Sequence record: MK250028.1
Reading direction: 5' to 3' (one strand)
Length of the DNA stretch: 64,000 nucleotides
Numbering within the stretch: position 1 is the first letter of the stretch; every line of letters begins with the position of its first letter. This document shows positions 1,880 through 16,676 of this stretch, in pieces. The notes below the pieces were generated by a model, which worked only from the letters and a program-made list of their open reading frames with translations, had not been told where the DNA came from and made no database searches. Position numbers and translations under genes: made by a program.

Positions 1880-2296
1880 ATGTCAGAATTAAAAGAATAT
1901 ATATGTGAATCTTGTAATAAAAAGTTTTATTCTACTAAGACTTTTAGAAAAGATAGACATATAAAATGTGATGAATGCAAACAAAAACGTAAACATTCTA
2001 AAGAAAATGAATTAAATAGTATATTAGATTGTTCTAAAAGAACAATATCTAAAATATTGAAACGTTCAAAAATAGGATGTGCAATATGTGGGTGGAATGA
2101 ATCTACTTGTGATATTCATCATATAATAGAAAAATCTAATGGTGGAACTGATGATATTTCTAATTTAATTATTGTATGTCCAAATCATCATAGAATGATA
2201 CATACGAATAAATGCTATTCAATAGATTATTTACAAAGTTTATCTATTAAAAATACATTTAATAATTGGAAAGATTATTATCATCCAGAAAGATAA
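1880..2296 (+). CDS. Free-standing HNH endonuclease with N-terminal Zn finger
   Basis: CAICGW..CDIHHI..GG..NLIIVCPNHH motif. True start is ATG 1880; the ORF-track extension runs through tRNA-Tyr. Confidence 0.9.
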   Translation: MSELKEYICESCNKKFYSTKTFRKDRHIKCDECKQKRKHSKENELNSILDCSKRTISKILKRSKIGCAICGWNESTCDIHHIIEKSNGGTDDISNLIIVCPNHHRMIHTNKCYSIDYLQSLSIKNTFNNWKDYYHPER

Positions 2297-2318: not shown

Positions 2319-2393
2319 GGTGCGTTAGTTCAGTTTGGTCAGAATGCTACACTGTCACTGTAGAGGTCACGGATTCGAGTTCCGTACGCACCG
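2319..2393 (+). tRNA. trnD: tRNA-Asp(GTC)
   Basis: Canonical cloverleaf, CTACA-CTGTCAC-TGTAG. Confidence 0.96.
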
Positions 2394-2402
2394 CAAAAAT
2401 TT

Positions 2403-2638
2403 GGTTATATAGTTCAAAATAGGTGGAGTAGTTAATAACTGGTAATTGACATGAATATCTATTGGAAGTAATATAAAAACTAATATGAGATGTTTGCGGA
2501 TCAAATGGTATTATTCTTAAGCTCTTTTACCGTTATTAGTTTTTATATTATGAGTAAGTAGAGAATACAATAATTATCGTTTACTCATAGAATACCCTGG
2601 GTCGAGGGAGATTAATGGTTCGAATCCATTTATAACCG
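2403..2638 (+). ncRNA. tRNA-like RNA with a three-hairpin insertion of about 170 nt in the D-loop and a shortened anticodon arm
   Basis: GGTTATA/TATAACC acceptor, GTTC/GAAT D-stem separated by the insert, AATGG-TTCGAAT-CCATT T-arm; perfect 16-bp inverted repeat 2469-2484/2535-2550 inside. Confidence 0.7.
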
Positions 2639-2672
2639 CTATGAATATTATTAGATATGTTTATTGAAACAT

Positions 2673-2743
2673 TGGACTATAGTATAATGGTAGTACAGAA
2701 GATTTTGGTTCTTCTAGACTGGGTCCGAATCCCGGTAGTCCAA
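2673..2743 (+). tRNA. trnQ: tRNA-Gln(TTG)
   Basis: TGGACTA/TAGTCCA acceptor, GAAGA-TTTTGGT-TCTTC; T-loop TCCGAAT is atypical. Confidence 0.9.
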
Positions 2744-2783
2744 CGATTTTAGTGAATATTTAAAAATAATAAAAATATTATAT

Positions 2784-2856
2784 TGCGGGATGGAGCAGTT
2801 GGTAGCTTGTCGGGCTCATAACCCGAAGGTCGTGTGTTCGAGTCACACTCCCGCTA
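2784..2856 (+). tRNA. trnM: Initiator tRNA-fMet(CAT), copy 1
   Basis: 1:72 mismatch (T:T), three G-C pairs at the base of the anticodon stem. Confidence 0.95.
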
Positions 2857-2865
2857 CTATTAAAT

Positions 2866-3026
2866 GGACCTTGCGTATGGCTGGTGCCTGTACATTGGAC
2901 TGAATTAACAGAATAAACTGTATAAAATTAATCTCTATATATTATATTTTATGGATATAAAATTATTAGTTCGATTCTAATTATAGAGACAATCCAGGGG
3001 TTGTGGTTCGATTCCACAAGGGTCCA
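2866..3026 (+). tRNA. trnF: tRNA-Phe(GAA) interrupted by an 86-nt insert (exons 2866-2904 and 2991-3026)
   Basis: Joining the exons gives a 75-nt cloverleaf with TTGGA-CTGAAAA-TCCAG, GGACCTT/AGGGTCC acceptor and TGTGG-TTCGATT-CCACA T-arm. Confidence 0.85.
2905..2990 (+). other. Putative tRNA intron with nested tRNA-like acceptor/T-arm domain
   Basis: ACAG-AATAAA-CTGT hairpin; TCTCTATA(2932-39)/TATAGAGA(2982-89) stem; ATTAG-TTCGATT-CTAAT T-arm; ends in C. Confidence 0.8.
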
Positions 3027-3078
3027 CTTTAACTGAAAAATCATATATACAGTTCGAATAAATAAAATTAATTTTATT

Positions 3079-3945
3079 ATGAATTGCGAAAATTGTGGGA
3101 AATATTATATTAAACCTATTTATGGTTCTGGACGATTTTGTTGTGGAAGTTGTAGATGTGCATATACAAATAAACATAGGAAAATATCTAACGAAACAAA
3201 AGAAAAAATATCAGAGTCATTAAAAAGGTATTATAATATAAAAAATGATATAAAAATTAAAAAATATTTTTGCGGTACATTATAGTTAAATAATGAAAAC
3301 CCTGAAATATCAAAACATTAGTCATCAAAATGGTTTAATAAATTAATACCATTTGGATTAAATATTAATACATTATATACAAAAAAATTTGTTGATGAAT
3401 ATAATAAAGTTAAAGATTTATTATATACTGAATATGTAATTAATCAATTATCACCAAAAGATATTTATATTAAATATAATTGTAAAAAATATATAAATAA
3501 TTCTGAAACTTTATTACATCTATTTAAATCATATAATTTTCCTATACGACATTTTAGTGAATCAACAACAGTATCATATTTACATGGTAAATTAAAAGGA
3601 CCCACACATACATTAGGTAAAGATTGCTATCATATTACATGGAATAATAAAAAAGTATATTTACGAAGTACATATGAATTAGATTATGCATTATATTTAG
3701 ATTCAAAACAAATTGATTATGATGTTGAATGTAAGAGAATAAAATATTATGATTCTATTAAATAGAAATATAGATGCGCAATACCAGATTTTTATATTTC
3801 AAATAAAAATTTATTAGTTGAAGTAAAATCTAATTATACATTAGATATTTAGAATATGAAAGATAAATTTAATGAATATATAAAATTAGGATATAATGTT
3901 AAATTAATACTAGAACATAAAGAAACAGATTTATATAAATTATAA
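3079..3945 (+). CDS. Free-standing PD-(D/E)xK endonuclease with N-terminal Zn finger (code 15, 4 TAG)
   Basis: Open 288 aa with TAG=Q; CENCG..YGSGRFC and PDF..LLVEVKS motifs. Confidence 0.85.
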
Positions 3946-5725: not shown

Positions 5726-5940
5726 GCTTCGATAGTTCAGTTGGTTAGAACGTCTGACTGTATACAGGAAACAACCTGATTAAATTAAACTACATAATGC
5801 TGTTAGGTATCAGACTTGCGGACGCAATATTGATTTATAACTATTATAGTAATAAATCTAAATCGCTGAAAGTTTAGTTGGTTCGAATCCAATTTATGTA
5901 GCTAATCAGAAAGTCGTAGGTTCGAGTCCTACTCGAAGCG
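5726..5940 (+). tRNA. trnN: tRNA-Asn(GTT) interrupted by a 141-nt insert (exons 5726-5761 and 5903-5940)
   Basis: Joining the exons gives a 74-nt cloverleaf with TCTGA-CTGTTAA-TCAGA (identical to tRNA-Asn at 340), a short variable loop and G73. Confidence 0.87.
5762..5902 (+). other. Putative tRNA intron with nested tRNA-like domain
   Basis: CAGG-AAACAA-CCTG hairpin; CTACATAA(5790-97)/TTATGTAG(5894-5901) stem; GTTGG-TTCGAAT-CCAAT T-arm; ends in C. Confidence 0.82.
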
Positions 5941-5945
5941 CAAAT

Positions 5946-9089: not shown

Positions 9090-9175
9090 GGAAAGGAAAT
9101 TGCGACGGCTCGCAAGCTTGTCTTGAAAACAAGTCGTACAGTGAAATGTATGGGGATCGACACCTCTCCTTTCCG
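9090..9175 (+). tRNA. trnS: tRNA-Ser(TGA)
   Basis: CTTGT-CTTGAAA-ACAAG, long variable arm, G73; T-loop ATCGACA. Confidence 0.88.
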
Positions 9176-9237
9176 CATTTTGTTTTACATATTTAAAGAC
9201 ATTATATATTTATAATATATAATGTCTTTAATTTTTA

Positions 9238-14313: not shown

Positions 14314-14384
14314 TGGGATATATTGTAATGGTAGCAACAGGGTTTCTGAGTCCCTTAGTACTGGTTCGAATCCGGTTATCCCAA
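14314..14384 (+). tRNA. trnQ: tRNA-Gln(CTG)
   Basis: TGGGATA/TATCCCA acceptor, AGGGT-TTCTGAG-TCCCT. Confidence 0.88.
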
Positions 14385-14443
14385 CATATTCGTAATTTTT
14401 ATTTTTTATTTTTTTATTTTTAAAGGATTTATACATAAAGAGA

Positions 14444-15992: not shown

Positions 15993-16676
15993 ATGAAACA
16001 TTATGATTCAATAGATAATATAAAATATAATACAGAATTAGTAGGTGAACAGGTATGGGCATTTAATAAATTGGATGGACAAAATTTTTGTGCTAAATAT
16101 TCTGTAAAGAAAAAAGAATTTACAAATTTTGGTTCAAGAAAATGTATGGTAGATGAGACATCAGAACAATTTGGTGATGCTGTACGTTATTTTAAATCAC
16201 ATAATTATTCATCTATATTAAGTAATATAGTTGAAAAACATAGGAGAAAGAAAGATATATTTTATGGCGTTGATGAAATTACGTTTTTCTTCGAATGGTA
16301 TGGTGATCATAGTTTTGCAGGATTTCATTCTGAAGAAGATAAAGATAATATGCATCTTGCATTAATTGATGTGTTCATCAAAAAGAAGGGATATATTGAA
16401 CCAAAGATATATATGGATCTATTTAGAGATTGTGGAATAGAATTGCCGCAATTAGTTTATACGGGACCATTATCAAATGATTTTATTAAAGATATTCAAG
16501 AAAATGACTGGACTGAACCAAATTGTAAATTTCCTTATGTAAAGGAAGGTGTTGTAATAAGGAGATCTACTATTTTAAAAGGACAACGAATGCCTAAAGT
16601 AAAAGTTAAAACAAAATGGTGGTTAACAGAATTGCATAAGAGATATACAGAAGAAGAATGTAAATTATTAGAGTAA
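15993..16676 (+). CDS. ATP-dependent RNA ligase-like nucleotidyltransferase (Rnl2-type core)
   Basis: Motifs KLDGQN (I), FFFEWYG (III), EGVVIR (IV), KVKVK (V). Confidence 0.75.
   Translation: MKHYDSIDNIKYNTELVGEQVWAFNKLDGQNFCAKYSVKKKEFTNFGSRKCMVDETSEQFGDAVRYFKSHNYSSILSNIVEKHRRKKDIFYGVDEITFFFEWYGDHSFAGFHSEEDKDNMHLALIDVFIKKKGYIEPKIYMDLFRDCGIELPQLVYTGPLSNDFIKDIQENDWTEPNCKFPYVKEGVVIRRSTILKGQRMPKVKVKTKWWLTELHKRYTEEECKLLE

What the first reader, a model, noticed from the sequence alone, without database searches (positions are those of the whole stretch)
2403..2639. tRNA-like RNA with a three-hairpin domain inserted in the D-loop
Seen: intact acceptor, D-stem (GTTC/GAAT), 5-nt variable loop and T-arm, ending G73-C74 like its neighbours. 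About 170 nt sit inside the D-loop and form three helices: AATAGGT/ATCTATT, a perfect 16-bp stem 2469-84/2535-50, and ATGAGTAA/TTACTCAT. The anticodon arm is only 4 bp with a 6-nt loop (GGGTCG). Inference: a processed, non-decoding tRNA scaffold displaying a large RNA domain, or an intron at a non-canonical site.
Basis: partly seen in the sequence, partly recalled or inferred. Interest (0 to 1): 0.74.

Follow-up and report, generated by a model that had tools for sequence, protein, structure and literature searches.

The report
tRNA-shaped phage RNA carrying a rod
In the transfer-RNA gene array of a Lak megaphage of gut Prevotella sits a conserved, unannotated gene for an RNA with a complete tRNA body that cannot read codons in the normal way and carries a conserved 160-base rod growing out of its D-loop; its function is unknown.

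Summary
The window is Prevotella phage Lak-B1. It has a 7-bp acceptor stem, the D-stem GTTC/GAAT, every tertiary-contact base of a class-I tRNA, a 5-nt variable loop, a T-arm and G73-C74. Standard tRNA finders, Rfam and the published Lak tRNA tables all miss it.

Homologues occur once per genome in every Lak-A, -B and -C genome checked, and in two further Lak-like contigs. They always lie just upstream of tRNA-Gln(UUG). Compensatory changes support the acceptor stem, T-stem, anticodon-arm analogue and the long stem. The shared fold is one rod (2426-2586), with an invariant closing helix and a 95-100% conserved apex.

The anticodon-arm analogue keeps its stem but is a hot spot of variation, with loops of 6 or 9 nt and no U33. 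Ordinary decoding is therefore very unlikely. No copy lacks the rod, and one relative lacks the whole gene.

Best reading: a non-decoding tRNA chassis that displays a functional rod. Excision of the rod as an intervening sequence is not excluded. No transcript data were available here, so function is inferred, not shown.

The parts
2403..2409 (+). Acceptor stem, 5' strand (GGTTATA). It pairs with 2631-2637.
   Evidence: Read. Seven of 7 pairs form in all 9 variants. Pair 5-68 is A-U in the B lineage and G-C in the A lineage.
2410..2411 (+). U8 and A9 linker.
   Evidence: Read directly. Invariant in alignment A4.
2412..2415 (+). D-stem, 5' strand (GTTC). It pairs with GAAT 2590-2593.
   Evidence: Invariant, so there is no covariation evidence. 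The neighbouring tRNA-Asp (2319-2394) has the same D-stem.
2416..2425 (+). 5' part of the D-loop (AAAATAGGTG), with A14, A15, G18 (2422) and G19 (2423).
   Evidence: Read directly. Conserved apart from one C/T site.
2426..2448 (+). Closing helix of the rod, 5' strand. GAGTA 2426-30, AAC 2437-39 and GGTAATTG 2441-48 pair with 2571-2586.
   Evidence: This is the minimum-energy fold of the isolated insert in B1, L035, L034 and A1. RNAalifold predicts it on both alignments. It is nearly invariant, so there is no covariation. One C-to-A change in L034 is absorbed by a register shift.
2449..2467 (+). Middle of the rod, 5' side: internal loops and a short helix (TCTATT 2458-63 with AGTAGA 2557-62 in B1).
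Evidence: This is the least conserved part (56-70% identity between A and B) and its fold is uncertain.
2468..2485 (+). Long stem, 5' strand.
   Evidence: The stem is 16/16 in the B lineage and L034, and 14 bp with one bulged U in the A lineage. There is one compensatory C-G to U-A swap. Changes from U-A to U-G fit only the + strand RNA.
2486..2533 (+). Conserved apex of the rod (TGAGATGTTTGCGGATCAAATGGTATTATTCTTAAGCTCTTTTACCGT).
   Evidence: Alignment columns 79-135 (2481-2537), which hold this apex, are 94.7% identical between Lak-A1 and B1 and 100% between L034 and B1. The internal pairing is not resolved, because two alifold runs disagree.
2534..2551 (+). Long stem, 3' strand.
2552..2570 (+). 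Middle of the rod, 3' side.
   Evidence: Helix 3 is 8/8 in B1, 7/8 in L034 and L035, and 3-4/8 in Lak-A.
2571..2586 (+). Closing helix of the rod, 3' strand (TAATTATC, GTT, TACTC).
   Evidence: Identical in all variants (the 15 bases of alignment columns 170-184). Fold.
2587..2589 (+). 3' part of the D-loop (ATA). A2589 takes the place of A21.
   Evidence: Read directly. The first base is A or G among variants.
2590..2593 (+). D-stem, 3' strand (GAAT).
2594..2608 (+). A26 followed by the anticodon-arm analogue, CCCT-GGGTCG-AGGG (4 bp, 6-nt loop).
   Evidence: The stem is kept by three pairs that change on both sides. Loop sequence and length vary. Ten of 16 variable columns among Lak-A variants fall here (P = 4e-9). 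GTC is kept in 5 of 6 loop variants.
2609..2613 (+). Variable loop of 5 nt (AGATT). It supplies G45 and U48 for the core triples.
   Evidence: Read directly. Invariant.
2614..2630 (+). T-arm: AATGG, loop TTCGAAT, CCATT.
   Evidence: The second pair is A-U in B and U-A in A. The first pair is G-U in L034.
2631..2639 (+). Acceptor stem 3' strand (TATAACC), discriminator G73 (2638) and C74 (2639). No CCA is encoded.
   Evidence: The neighbouring tRNAs also carry C74 followed by a non-C base.
2319..2394 (+). Context: tRNA-Asp(GUC), 8 nt upstream of the element.
2673..2744 (+). Context: tRNA-Gln(UUG), 33 nt downstream. It is the next tRNA gene downstream of the element in every locus scanned with a tRNA finder.
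1880..2296 (+). Context: HNH endonuclease ORF upstream, syntenic with the element in the A and B lineages and in L034 and L035.
   Evidence: Pfam PF01844, E = 5.8e-9. tblastn shows 85-87% identity next to the element in Lak-A loci.

Best explanation
This is a single-copy gene for a non-decoding, tRNA-shaped RNA of about 237 nt. It was found only in Lak megaphages and two Lak-like contigs.

Shown:
- It has a complete class-I tRNA core: acceptor stem, D-stem, T-arm, a 5-nt variable loop, and U8, A14, A15/U48, G18, G19, A21, U54, U55, C56 and A58.
- A domain of about 161 nt leaves the D-loop between G19-U20-G and A21. That is the naturally length-variable part of the D-loop.
- The domain folds back on itself as one long imperfect hairpin (a rod).
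- The gene lies on the same strand as the tRNA array and at tRNA-like spacing within it.

Inferred:
- It is transcribed with the array.
- Its ends are cut by RNase P and by a 3' endonuclease, and it receives CCA. Lak phages are annotated as encoding a CCA-adding enzyme.
- The tRNA body serves as a processing signal, a stabiliser and possibly a handle for tRNA-binding proteins.
- The rod, with its invariant base and nearly invariant apex, is the working part and binds a protein or nucleic-acid partner.
- The shortened, fast-changing anticodon-arm analogue acts as a structural strut or a variable contact surface, not as a codon reader.
- The body may descend from a tRNA-Asp-type gene.
For: - Identity and copy number: the window is Lak-B1. 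The element occurs at one place in each of 15 Lak genomes. It has no paralogue in the 64-kb window or in the loci fetched by then.
- Wider distribution: it is present in two further Lak-like contigs of 531 and 464 kb. It is absent from 185,579 bacterial and archaeal species genomes, where only chance 20-mer matches appeared.
- Structure: 99.5% of cells pair, and 6 pairs change on both sides, in the acceptor stem, T-stem, anticodon-arm analogue and long stem. No shuffle reached the observed pairing or covariation score.
- Strand: the one-sided changes go to G-U, which fits only the + strand RNA. The + strand folds at -33.3 kcal/mol against -22.0 for the - strand.
- Cloverleaf: with the insert removed, ARAGORN recognises a cloverleaf with a 6-nt loop.
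- Rod: it is the minimum-energy fold of the isolated insert in four lineages.
- Conservation: apex 95-100%, closing strand 100%, middle of the rod 56-70%, anticodon-arm analogue 39%.
- Hot spot: P = 4e-9 within Lak-A.
- No decoding features: the loops are 6 or 9 nt, lack U33 and vary in sequence.
- No rod-less allele: none among at least 25 copies. In contrast, the anticodon-loop intron of tRNA-Phe is present in B1 and A1 and absent in L034.
- Transcription unit: there is no terminator-like site and no ORF of 50 aa or more across the element.
- CCA: Devoto et al. 2019 list a cca gene and report some expression of tRNAs.
Against: - No transcript, end-mapping or stability data were available. 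Processing, CCA addition and persistence of the full-length RNA are inferences.
- D-stem and closing helix are invariant, so they carry no covariation evidence.
- The sample has few independent lineages (roughly A, B/L035 and L034), so the shuffle statistics overstate the support.
- The Lak-A rod is no more stable than shuffled sequence (z = -0.13).
- The apex fold is unresolved.
- One contig (L018) has lost the 5' acceptor and D strand while the rest is intact.
- One relative (L044) lacks the gene altogether, so it is dispensable in that lineage.
- No partner for the rod is known, and no Rfam family matches it.
Confidence: 0.45

Rival explanations
1. The rod is an intervening sequence or non-canonical intron that is removed after transcription. 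One route is cleavage of the long duplex by host RNase III. This would leave either a two-piece tRNA-like RNA held together by the acceptor stem, D-stem and stub helix, as in fragmented 23S rRNA, or a joined RNA of about 75 nt if a phage RNA ligase seals the ends. The product would be an unusual tRNA-Asp-like molecule with a short anticodon loop.
For: - The insert is a long hairpin that replaces part of a loop, which is the geometry of rRNA intervening sequences.
- Lak tRNA genes are already known to carry 'enigmatic introns'. The same paper lists a D-loop insertion in a tRNA-Met of another huge phage as 'possible intron?'.
- An RNA-ligase-family ORF (PF09414) lies beside the tRNA array at 15993-16676, and a matching RNA_ligase gene is called at the corresponding place in L034 and L035. 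Devoto et al. also list a T4 Rnl2-like gene.
- GTC is retained in 5 of 6 loop variants, G73 and G10 are present, and the D-stem equals that of tRNA-Asp.
Against: - Intervening sequences are sporadic and poorly conserved. Here no allele lacks the rod, and its apex and base are the best conserved parts of the gene.
- Even after removal, the product has no 7-nt anticodon loop and no U33.
- There is no bulge-helix-bulge motif at the junctions, no group I core, and no similarity to the boundaries of the Lak anticodon-loop introns.
- The ends left in a D-loop are not a nick in a duplex, which is the substrate Rnl2-type ligases prefer (established knowledge of T4 Rnl2).
Confidence: 0.25
2. The element is a decaying duplicate of a tRNA gene. 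It was disabled by a palindromic insertion and an anticodon-loop deletion, has no function, and persists only because little time has passed.
For: - The anticodon arm is degenerate and highly variable.
- The L018 allele has lost the 5' strand.
- The gene is absent in L044.
- Lak-A carries a clearly degenerate tRNA-like remnant just upstream, scoring 18.7 bits at L001:522-591.
- The Lak-A rod has no excess stability.
Against: - Stems are kept by compensatory changes in four helices.
- Devoto et al. report only about 61-65% identity between Lak-A and Lak-B over an alignment with A1. The element is about 85% identical, and its apex 95-100%.
- All tertiary-contact bases of the tRNA core are intact.
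- Variation is concentrated in one hairpin that still keeps its stem, rather than spread evenly.
Confidence: 0.1
3. The rod is a small mRNA. It would encode a hydrophobic peptide of 23-27 aa (MFAD(Q/R)MVL...), starting at ATG 2490. This resembles a type I toxin or a tmRNA-style message embedded in a tRNA-like RNA.
For: The frame is open in every aligned variant (read). Type I toxin mRNAs are strongly folded, which is established knowledge.
Against: - None of the 5 variable sites in the conserved part of the frame falls on a third codon position, and all five change the amino acid (read).
- The C-terminal halves differ completely between A and B.
- An open frame of about 24 codons is expected by chance in roughly one case in five at 26% G+C (my estimate).
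- There is no G3-U70 pair, and ARAGORN's only tmRNA call in the first 16 kb is a low-stringency permuted one at 2652-3152, outside the element. The only Rfam tmRNA match is an 11-nt fragment at E = 5.8.
Confidence: 0.03

Closest known systems
Lak megaphage 'enigmatic' tRNA introns (Devoto et al. 2019, PMC6784885, Supplementary Table 6)
   Same: Same phages and the same tRNA array. Both are tRNA genes interrupted by conserved inserts of 80-140 nt with no Rfam family. That table also lists a tRNA-Met of another huge phage with a 60-nt D-loop insert, marked 'possible intron?'.
   Different: - Those inserts sit in the anticodon loop next to a normal anticodon. They consist of a small 5' hairpin, an AAATTAAA-like spacer and a nested mini-tRNA with its own acceptor stem and T-arm. 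They are present in some genomes and absent in others.
- This insert sits in the D-loop after G18-G19, has no T-loop motif and is a rod. It is present in every copy, and the host 'tRNA' has no usable anticodon loop.
- The element is not in their tRNA or intron tables.
tmRNA (transfer-messenger RNA)
   Same: The acceptor stem and T-arm frame a large internal domain that enters and leaves through a long helix next to D-loop-like bases. tmRNAs are known in huge phages (my knowledge).
   Different: There is no G3-U70 alanine identity pair (U3-A70 here). D-stem, anticodon-arm analogue and variable loop are retained. There are no pseudoknot ring and no tag frame. ARAGORN's tmRNA mode and Rfam find no tmRNA in the element.
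Intervening sequences of bacterial 23S rRNA, excised by RNase III without religation (my knowledge: Burgin et al. 1990, Salmonella)
   Same: An extended stem-loop grows out of what is normally a short loop of a structured RNA. The host RNA could stay functional as two pieces.
   Different: Those sequences are sporadic and weakly conserved. This rod is fixed, with a 95-100% conserved apex. Excision was not tested.
Engineered 'tRNA scaffold' for expressing recombinant RNA (my knowledge: Ponchon and Dardel 2007)
   Same: A tRNA body provides RNase P and 3' processing and protection from nucleases for a passenger RNA domain.
   Different: The artificial scaffold replaces the anticodon arm. Here the passenger leaves from the D-loop, and a short anticodon-arm analogue is kept. 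This one is natural and conserved.
Other non-coding RNAs in phage tRNA arrays: T4 species 1 and 2 RNAs, and GOLLD and ROOL RNAs (my knowledge)
   Same: All are structured RNAs of unknown function that lie among or beside phage tRNA genes and depend on tRNA-type processing.
   Different: There is no sequence or model match. The whole-window Rfam scan finds only tRNAs. This RNA is much smaller than GOLLD or ROOL, and it is built on a complete tRNA core.
YrlA / bacterial Y RNA
   Same: A tRNA-like module is joined to a long stem.
   Different: The topology is the opposite. In YrlA the RNA ends lie in the long stem and the tRNA-like module is at the apex. There is no Rfam match.

Membership tests
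Canonical decoding tRNA (Rfam RF00005) | 7-bp acceptor stem with discriminator, and a T-arm with a T-loop of TTCRANY type. | tested here: met
   All pairs form in 9 variants, with compensatory changes.
Canonical decoding tRNA (Rfam RF00005) | D-arm with a loop of about 7-11 nt carrying G18 and G19. | tested here: not met
   D-stem, A14, G18, G19 and A21 are present, but the loop is 174 nt long.
Canonical decoding tRNA (Rfam RF00005) | 5-bp anticodon stem with a 7-nt loop, U33 and a purine at position 37. | tested here: not met
   The stem is 4-5 bp. The loops are 6 nt (9 nt in L034), lack U33 and vary in sequence.
Canonical decoding tRNA (Rfam RF00005) | Score at or above the family's gathering threshold of 29 bits. 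| tested here: not met
   B1 gives no hit. A1 and L034 give only local hits to the 3' part, at 24.7 and 22.5 bits. ARAGORN at default settings does not call it.
tmRNA | G3-U70 alanine identity pair, tag-peptide frame and pseudoknots, and no anticodon arm. | tested here: not met
   The pair is U3-A70. ARAGORN -m finds no tmRNA in the element; its one low-stringency permuted call lies at 2652-3152. Rfam gives only an 11-nt fragment at E = 5.8.
Group I intron in a tRNA gene | Conserved P3-P9 catalytic core (Rfam RF00028), length of about 200 nt or more, and insertion in the anticodon loop. | tested here: not met
   There is no match even at E up to 10 on three lineages. The insert is a 161-nt rod and sits in the D-loop.
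Archaeal or eukaryal endonuclease-spliced intron | Bulge-helix-bulge motif at the exon-intron junctions. | tested here: not met
   The predicted junction is a 5-bp helix with a 5-6-nt bulge on the 5' strand only. There are no paired 3-nt bulges. Whether the phage or host has a splicing endonuclease was not tested.
Lak anticodon-loop introns with a nested mini-tRNA | Position 37/38, with a 5' hairpin, an AAATTAAA spacer, and a nested acceptor stem and T-arm. | tested here: not met
   Comparison with the sequences. The insert has no T-loop motif and different boundaries.
Lak anticodon-loop introns with a nested mini-tRNA | Presence or absence varies among related genomes. | tested here: not met
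   Every copy of the element carries the rod. The Phe intron is polymorphic.
rRNA-type intervening sequence | An extended hairpin replaces a loop. | tested here: met
rRNA-type intervening sequence | Excision by RNase III, sporadic occurrence and weak sequence conservation. | tested here: inconclusive
   Excision cannot be tested with these tools. The occurrence and conservation criteria are not met.
MITE or palindromic repeat element | Many dispersed copies per genome. | tested here: not met
   There is one place per Lak genome and no second copy in the window or the loci fetched by then.
YrlA / Y RNA | RNA ends in the long stem with a Ro-binding helix, a tRNA-like module at the apex, and a match to the Rfam model. 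| tested here: not met
   The topology is the opposite and there is no Rfam match.

The most novel reading that the evidence does not exclude
The RNA is a new kind of phage tRNA mimic. A fully folded tRNA chassis would deliver a conserved rod-shaped effector to machinery that handles tRNAs, such as the ribosome, a synthetase, a modification enzyme, or a host tRNA-cleaving defence nuclease. The fast-changing anticodon-arm analogue would be the surface on which phage and host chase each other, acting as a decoy or inhibitor and not as a decoder.
Probability: 0.2. Interest if true: 0.85.

Novelty: new variant of a known kind. Interest (0 to 1): 0.6.

Why it matters
Lak megaphages are among the largest known phages and are common in gut microbiomes rich in Prevotella. 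Their tRNA arrays are already known to hold unexplained 'introns'.

This element adds a different architecture. I know of no other natural tRNA-like RNA that combines:
- an intact tRNA core;
- a conserved structured domain attached to the D-loop;
- an anticodon arm that has been released from decoding and evolves quickly while keeping its stem.

If the full-length RNA is stable, it would be a natural counterpart of the engineered tRNA scaffold and a candidate tRNA-mimicking effector in phage-host conflict. If the rod is removed, it would be a first case of an intervening sequence in the D-loop of a bacterial-type tRNA gene. Either outcome can be tested directly with existing metatranscriptomes and simple in vitro processing assays.

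The case also shows that tRNA finders and Rfam miss such genes.

Tried and rejected
- Known RNA families. The window was scanned at gathering thresholds, and B1, Lak-A1 and L034 at E up to 10. Only chance-level hits and sub-threshold tRNA matches to the 3' part appeared.
- tmRNA. ARAGORN's tmRNA mode gave only a spurious permuted call elsewhere.
- Class-II tRNA parse. I tried reading the small hairpin as a long variable arm with the intron in the anticodon loop. ARAGORN at 70-80% stringency gives three mutually inconsistent parses (Thr, Tyr, Val) with mismatched anticodon stems, so I rejected it.
- Origin from tRNA-Asp. D-stem, G73 and the GTC in the loop agree. Overall similarity of the joined frame to tRNA-Asp is no higher than to Thr, Ala or Gln, so I keep this only as a lead.
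- Paralogues or a repeat family. None were found.
- Host origin. A scan of species-representative genomes gave only chance 20-mer matches.
- More distant homologues:
  - Five pattern scans of viral contigs and one of metagenomes gave only A- and B-type copies. One of the viral scans was wasted on a gap range set too short.
  - The neighbour-protein route gave L034, L035 and the empty site in L044.
  - Relatives from phages of about 400-450 kb have no tRNA array near the marker gene.
- CRISPR escape as the cause of the hot spot. No spacer in the held part of the published spacer file matches.
- Consensus fold of the apex. RNAalifold gave two different answers on two alignments, so it is unresolved.
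- Literature. Searches found no description of this element, nothing under the exact phrases I tried for six-membered anticodon loops, and no further treatment of Lak tRNA introns after 2019.
- Promoter scan. Sigma-70-type matches equal the shuffle expectation, and the scan is not suited to Bacteroidota.
Full report
**Source and setting.** The first 12 kb of the window are 100% identical to Prevotella phage Lak-B1, MK250020.1, positions 123981-135980. The window is therefore Lak-B1 starting at record position 123981.
- Lak phages have genomes of about 540-550 kb and about 26% G+C. They read TAG as glutamine.
[quoted passage not shown] 2019, PMC6784885).
- The element lies in a dense, same-strand tRNA array. 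ARAGORN finds 17 tRNAs in the window, 16 of them in the first 9 kb.
- It starts 8 nt after tRNA-Asp(GUC) and ends 33 nt before tRNA-Gln(UUG).

**Observation.**
- The frame consists of the following parts:
  - the acceptor stem, 2403-2409 with 2631-2637;
  - U8 and A9;
  - D-stem GTTC 2412-15 with GAAT 2590-93;
  - A26;
  - a 4-bp stem with the 6-nt loop GGGTCG (2595-2608);
  - the 5-nt variable loop AGATT;
  - the T-arm AATGG-TTCGAAT-CCATT;
  - G73 and C74.
- Reading the sequence against the standard tRNA numbering, all tertiary-contact bases of a class-I tRNA are in place. These are U8, A14, A15 with U48, G18 and G19 (2422-23), A21 (2589), G45, U54, U55, C56 and A58.
- The extra 161 nt therefore leave the D-loop after G19-U20-G and return three bases before G22. 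This is the stretch of the D-loop that varies in length among normal tRNAs.
- Default ARAGORN, Rfam at gathering thresholds and Rfam at E up to 10 do not call the element.
- It is also absent from the tRNA and intron tables of Devoto et al. The B1 coordinates 126383-126619 do not appear, and the listed neighbours are Asp 126299-126373 and Gln 126653-126723.
- With the insert deleted in a script, ARAGORN reports a clean cloverleaf with a two-base 'anticodon', meaning a 6-nt loop. It does so at default stringency for Lak-A1 and at 90% stringency for B1.

**Homologues.**
- blastn finds one copy in each of the 15 deposited Lak genomes. The copies are 100% identical in the nine B genomes and about 85% identical in A1, A2 and C1.
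- Pattern scans of IMG/VR and of metagenome contigs add further A- and B-type copies with small differences.
- Walking out from a neighbouring 257-aa ORF gave two more lineages, from contigs of 531 and 464 kb: L034:3790-4027 and L035:1122-1357.
- Wherever both flanks are in hand, the order is tRNA-Tyr, HNH endonuclease gene, the element, tRNA-Gln. A tRNA-Asp sits between the HNH gene and the element in B, L034 and L035. Lak-A has a degenerate tRNA-like remnant at that place.
- In a more distant relative, L044, the HNH gene is 80% identical and the order is Tyr, HNH, Asp, Gln. Only 11 nt separate Asp from Gln. The whole element is missing there.
- One 2.9-kb metagenome contig (L018) has an 18-nt deletion that removes the 5' acceptor strand and most of the D-stem strand. 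The rest of that copy is intact.
- There is no second copy in the window or in the loci fetched by then. There is no real match in 185,579 species-representative bacterial and archaeal genomes.

**Structure, tested on nine distinct sequences (alignment A4).**
- I specified a structure made of the frame, a closing helix, the inner long stem and the small hairpin. On it, 99.5% of cells pair and six pairs change on both sides.
- The changing pairs are acceptor 5-68 (A-U or G-C), long stem (C-G or U-A), T-stem (A-U or U-A), and three pairs in the small hairpin.
- None of 500 shuffles reached the observed pairing, the number of cells changed on both sides or the covariation score. For the count of pairs changed on both sides, 26 of 500 did. 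Sliding the partners drops pairing to 29-49%.
- There are only about three independent lineages, so these numbers overstate the support. D-stem and closing helix never vary.
- The one-sided changes go to G-U. This fits an RNA read from the + strand, which also folds better than the - strand (-33.3 against -22.0 kcal/mol).

- The 16-bp stem is real. It is 16/16 in the B lineage and L034, and 14 bp with one bulged U in Lak-A.
- Helix 3 (ATGAGTAA with TTACTCAT) is 8/8 only in B1. It is 7/8 in L034 and L035 and 3-4/8 in Lak-A.
- Helix 1 can form in all variants (6-7 of 7 pairs) but has no compensatory change. It would also tie up G18 and G19.
- When the insert alone (2426-2586) is folded, all four lineages give the same shape without any constraint: one long imperfect hairpin. 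In B1 it is built as follows:
  - closing helix GAGTA 2426-30 with TACTC 2582-86;
  - AAC and GGTAATTG 2437-48 with 2571-81;
  - internal loops;
  - an 18-bp stem, 2468-85 with 2534-51;
  - an apex, 2486-2533.
- In full-length B1, the three-hairpin fold is about 3 kcal/mol better than the rod fold (-52.0 against -48.8 kcal/mol with the tRNA frame enforced). Both folds may be populated in B1.
- The rod is the only fold shared by all lineages.
- Two caveats apply. The Lak-A rod is no more stable than shuffled sequence (z = -0.13). The pairing inside the apex is unresolved, because RNAalifold gave different answers on two alignments.

**Pattern of conservation.** Identity between Lak-A1 and B1, by region:

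| Region | Identity A1 vs B1 |
|---|---|
| 5' frame | 91% |
| Closing helix | 96% and 100% |
| Apex | 95% (100% between L034 and B1) |
| Middle of the rod | 56-70% |
| Small hairpin | 39% |

- For comparison, Devoto et al. give about 61-65% identity between B and A genomes over an alignment with A1.
- Among six otherwise almost identical Lak-A variants, 10 of 16 variable columns fall in the 19 columns of the small hairpin (hypergeometric P = 4e-9).
- That hairpin always keeps a G+C-rich stem: CCCT/AGGG, ACCCA/TGGGT, GCCCC/GGGGT, ACTCA/TGGGT or CCCC/GGGG.
- Its loop is GGGTCG, GAGTCG, AGGTCG, ATGTCT, GTGGGA or the 9-nt TCAAGTCTT.
- No variant has the 7-nt loop with U33 that decoding needs.
- GTC survives in five of six variants. 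Together with G73, G10 and a D-stem identical to that of the adjacent tRNA-Asp, this hints at descent from a tRNA-Asp-type gene. Overall similarity of the joined frame does not single out Asp.

**What it is not.**
- It matches no Rfam family, including group I introns, tmRNA, 6S, SRP, Y RNA, small ribozymes, GOLLD and ROOL.
- ARAGORN finds no tmRNA in it, and the acceptor stem has U3-A70 where tmRNA has G3-U70.
- It is not one of the published Lak introns. Those sit in the anticodon loop and carry a small hairpin, an AAATTAAA-like spacer and a nested mini-tRNA with its own T-arm. They are also present in some genomes and absent in others. For example, tRNA-Phe(GAA) is interrupted in B1 (2867-3027) and in A1 but continuous in L034.
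- It is not a repeat family.
- It is probably not coding. An ATG-initiated frame of 23-27 codons runs through the apex. All five variable sites in its conserved part fall on first or second codon positions and change the amino acid. The C-terminal parts are unrelated between lineages (read).

**Most likely mechanism.**
- Shown: a conserved, single-copy, + strand RNA structure with a complete tRNA core and a rod attached in the D-loop. The anticodon-arm analogue is free of decoding constraint. The rod has a sequence-constrained base and apex.
- Inferred: the gene is transcribed as part of the tRNA array. There is no terminator-like site nearby and no ORF of 50 aa or more over it.
- Inferred: RNase P and a 3' endonuclease release the RNA, using the acceptor stem, T-arm and elbow. 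CCA is then added. None is encoded, and Lak is annotated with a cca gene.
- Inferred: the tRNA body acts as processing signal, stabiliser and perhaps handle, while the rod does the work by binding a partner that recognises its conserved apex.
- I put this reading at about 0.45.
- The main rival, at about 0.25, is that the rod is cut out. This could happen by RNase III, as for rRNA intervening sequences, possibly followed by sealing by one of the phage RNA ligases. An RNA-ligase-family ORF (PF09414) lies at 15993-16676 beside the array, and a matching RNA_ligase gene is called at the corresponding place in L034 and L035.
  - Against this rival, no allele lacks the rod.
  - The rod's apex and base are the most conserved parts of the gene.
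  - The product would still lack a normal anticodon loop.
- A functionless decaying gene (about 0.1) fits the L018 deletion, the L044 absence and the weak Lak-A rod. It does not fit the compensatory changes or the uneven conservation.

**Novelty.** Insert-bearing tRNA genes in huge phages are published, including one D-loop case flagged 'possible intron?'. The general kind is therefore known. This gene, its D-loop rod with a conserved apex, the fast-changing anticodon-arm analogue and the empty site in a relative are not described in the papers I could search. I rate it a new variant of a known kind, with interest about 0.6. The decisive data are RNA ends and sizes, which existing metatranscriptomes or a simple cloning experiment would give.

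Noticed in passing
window 2867-3027 (+): A tRNA-Phe(GAA) gene is split by an insert of about 100 nt in the anticodon loop. The insert holds a nested mini-tRNA without a D-arm: acceptor CTCTATA/TATAGAG, a 6-bp hairpin and the T-arm ATTAG-TTCGATT-CTAAT. It is orthologous to the Phe intron listed for Lak-A1 and A2. Devoto's Table 1 counts only one intron for the B genomes, so this one was not counted. ARAGORN misses it even in intron mode. L034:5178-5253 carries the uninterrupted allele with the loop CTGAAAA.
   Followed up: partly
window 5726-5941 (+): This is the tRNA-Tyr(GTA) gene with a 141-nt intron published for Lak-B1. ARAGORN in intron mode calls it Ser(gct). The nested mini-tRNA in the intron has itself been expanded by about 50 nt compared with the Lak-A version.
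   Followed up: partly
window 15993-16676 (+): An ORF of 227 aa matches Pfam RNA_ligase (PF09414, E = 4e-8), next to the last tRNA of the array (Gln-CUG, 14314-14385). An RNA_ligase gene of 227-249 aa is called at the corresponding place in L034 and L035. It could serve tRNA repair or the joining of cut tRNA halves. It is shorter than the 282-aa T4 Rnl2-like gene listed by Devoto et al. for A1, and whether the two correspond was not checked.
   Followed up: partly
L001:522-591 (Lak-A1), between the HNH gene and the element: A degenerate tRNA-like sequence (Rfam tRNA model 18.7 bits, E = 0.12) occupies the place where the B lineage, L034 and L035 have tRNA-Asp. Its D-arm resembles that of tRNA-Asp and of the element.
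   Followed up: partly
L019:8340-8790 (-), the Lak-A orthologue of the HNH ORF at window 1880-2296: The Lak-A copy of the HNH endonuclease is 85-87% identical in protein sequence. It has a TAA stop three codons after the only upstream ATG, so it either starts elsewhere or is a pseudogene.
   Followed up: no
L027:201-327 and 79-193 (MK250020.1 423150-423276 and 423028-423142); L028 (201303-201398): Lak-B1 has other odd tRNA-like genes. The 127-nt 'Undet' gene has a 4-bp stem with a 6-nt loop (TCCT-TTGAGT-AGGA) where the anticodon arm should be, plus about 60 extra nt before the T-arm. The 115-nt 'Gly-CCC' gene has about 45 extra nt in the variable region. The 96-nt 'Undet' gene has a 7-nt loop without U33 and a long variable arm. 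The element may belong to a wider set of non-decoding tRNA-like RNAs in these phages.
   Followed up: partly
L018:1826-2063 (metagenome contig OBLI01019356.1): This natural allele of the element has lost 18 nt covering the 5' acceptor strand and most of the D-stem strand. The rod and the 3' half are unchanged.
   Followed up: partly
L044:3138-3297 (ENA ERZ15609952, 207-kb contig): A related phage has tRNA-Asp and tRNA-Gln only 11 nt apart, downstream of an HNH gene that is 80% identical. This is an empty site for the element.
   Followed up: yes
window 9090-9176 (+): ARAGORN calls a possible 87-nt tRNA-Ser(tga) here only at reduced stringency. ARAGORN at default settings calls a tRNA-Ser(tga) at the end of the tRNA array in the Lak-A-type contigs L019 and L021.
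   Followed up: no
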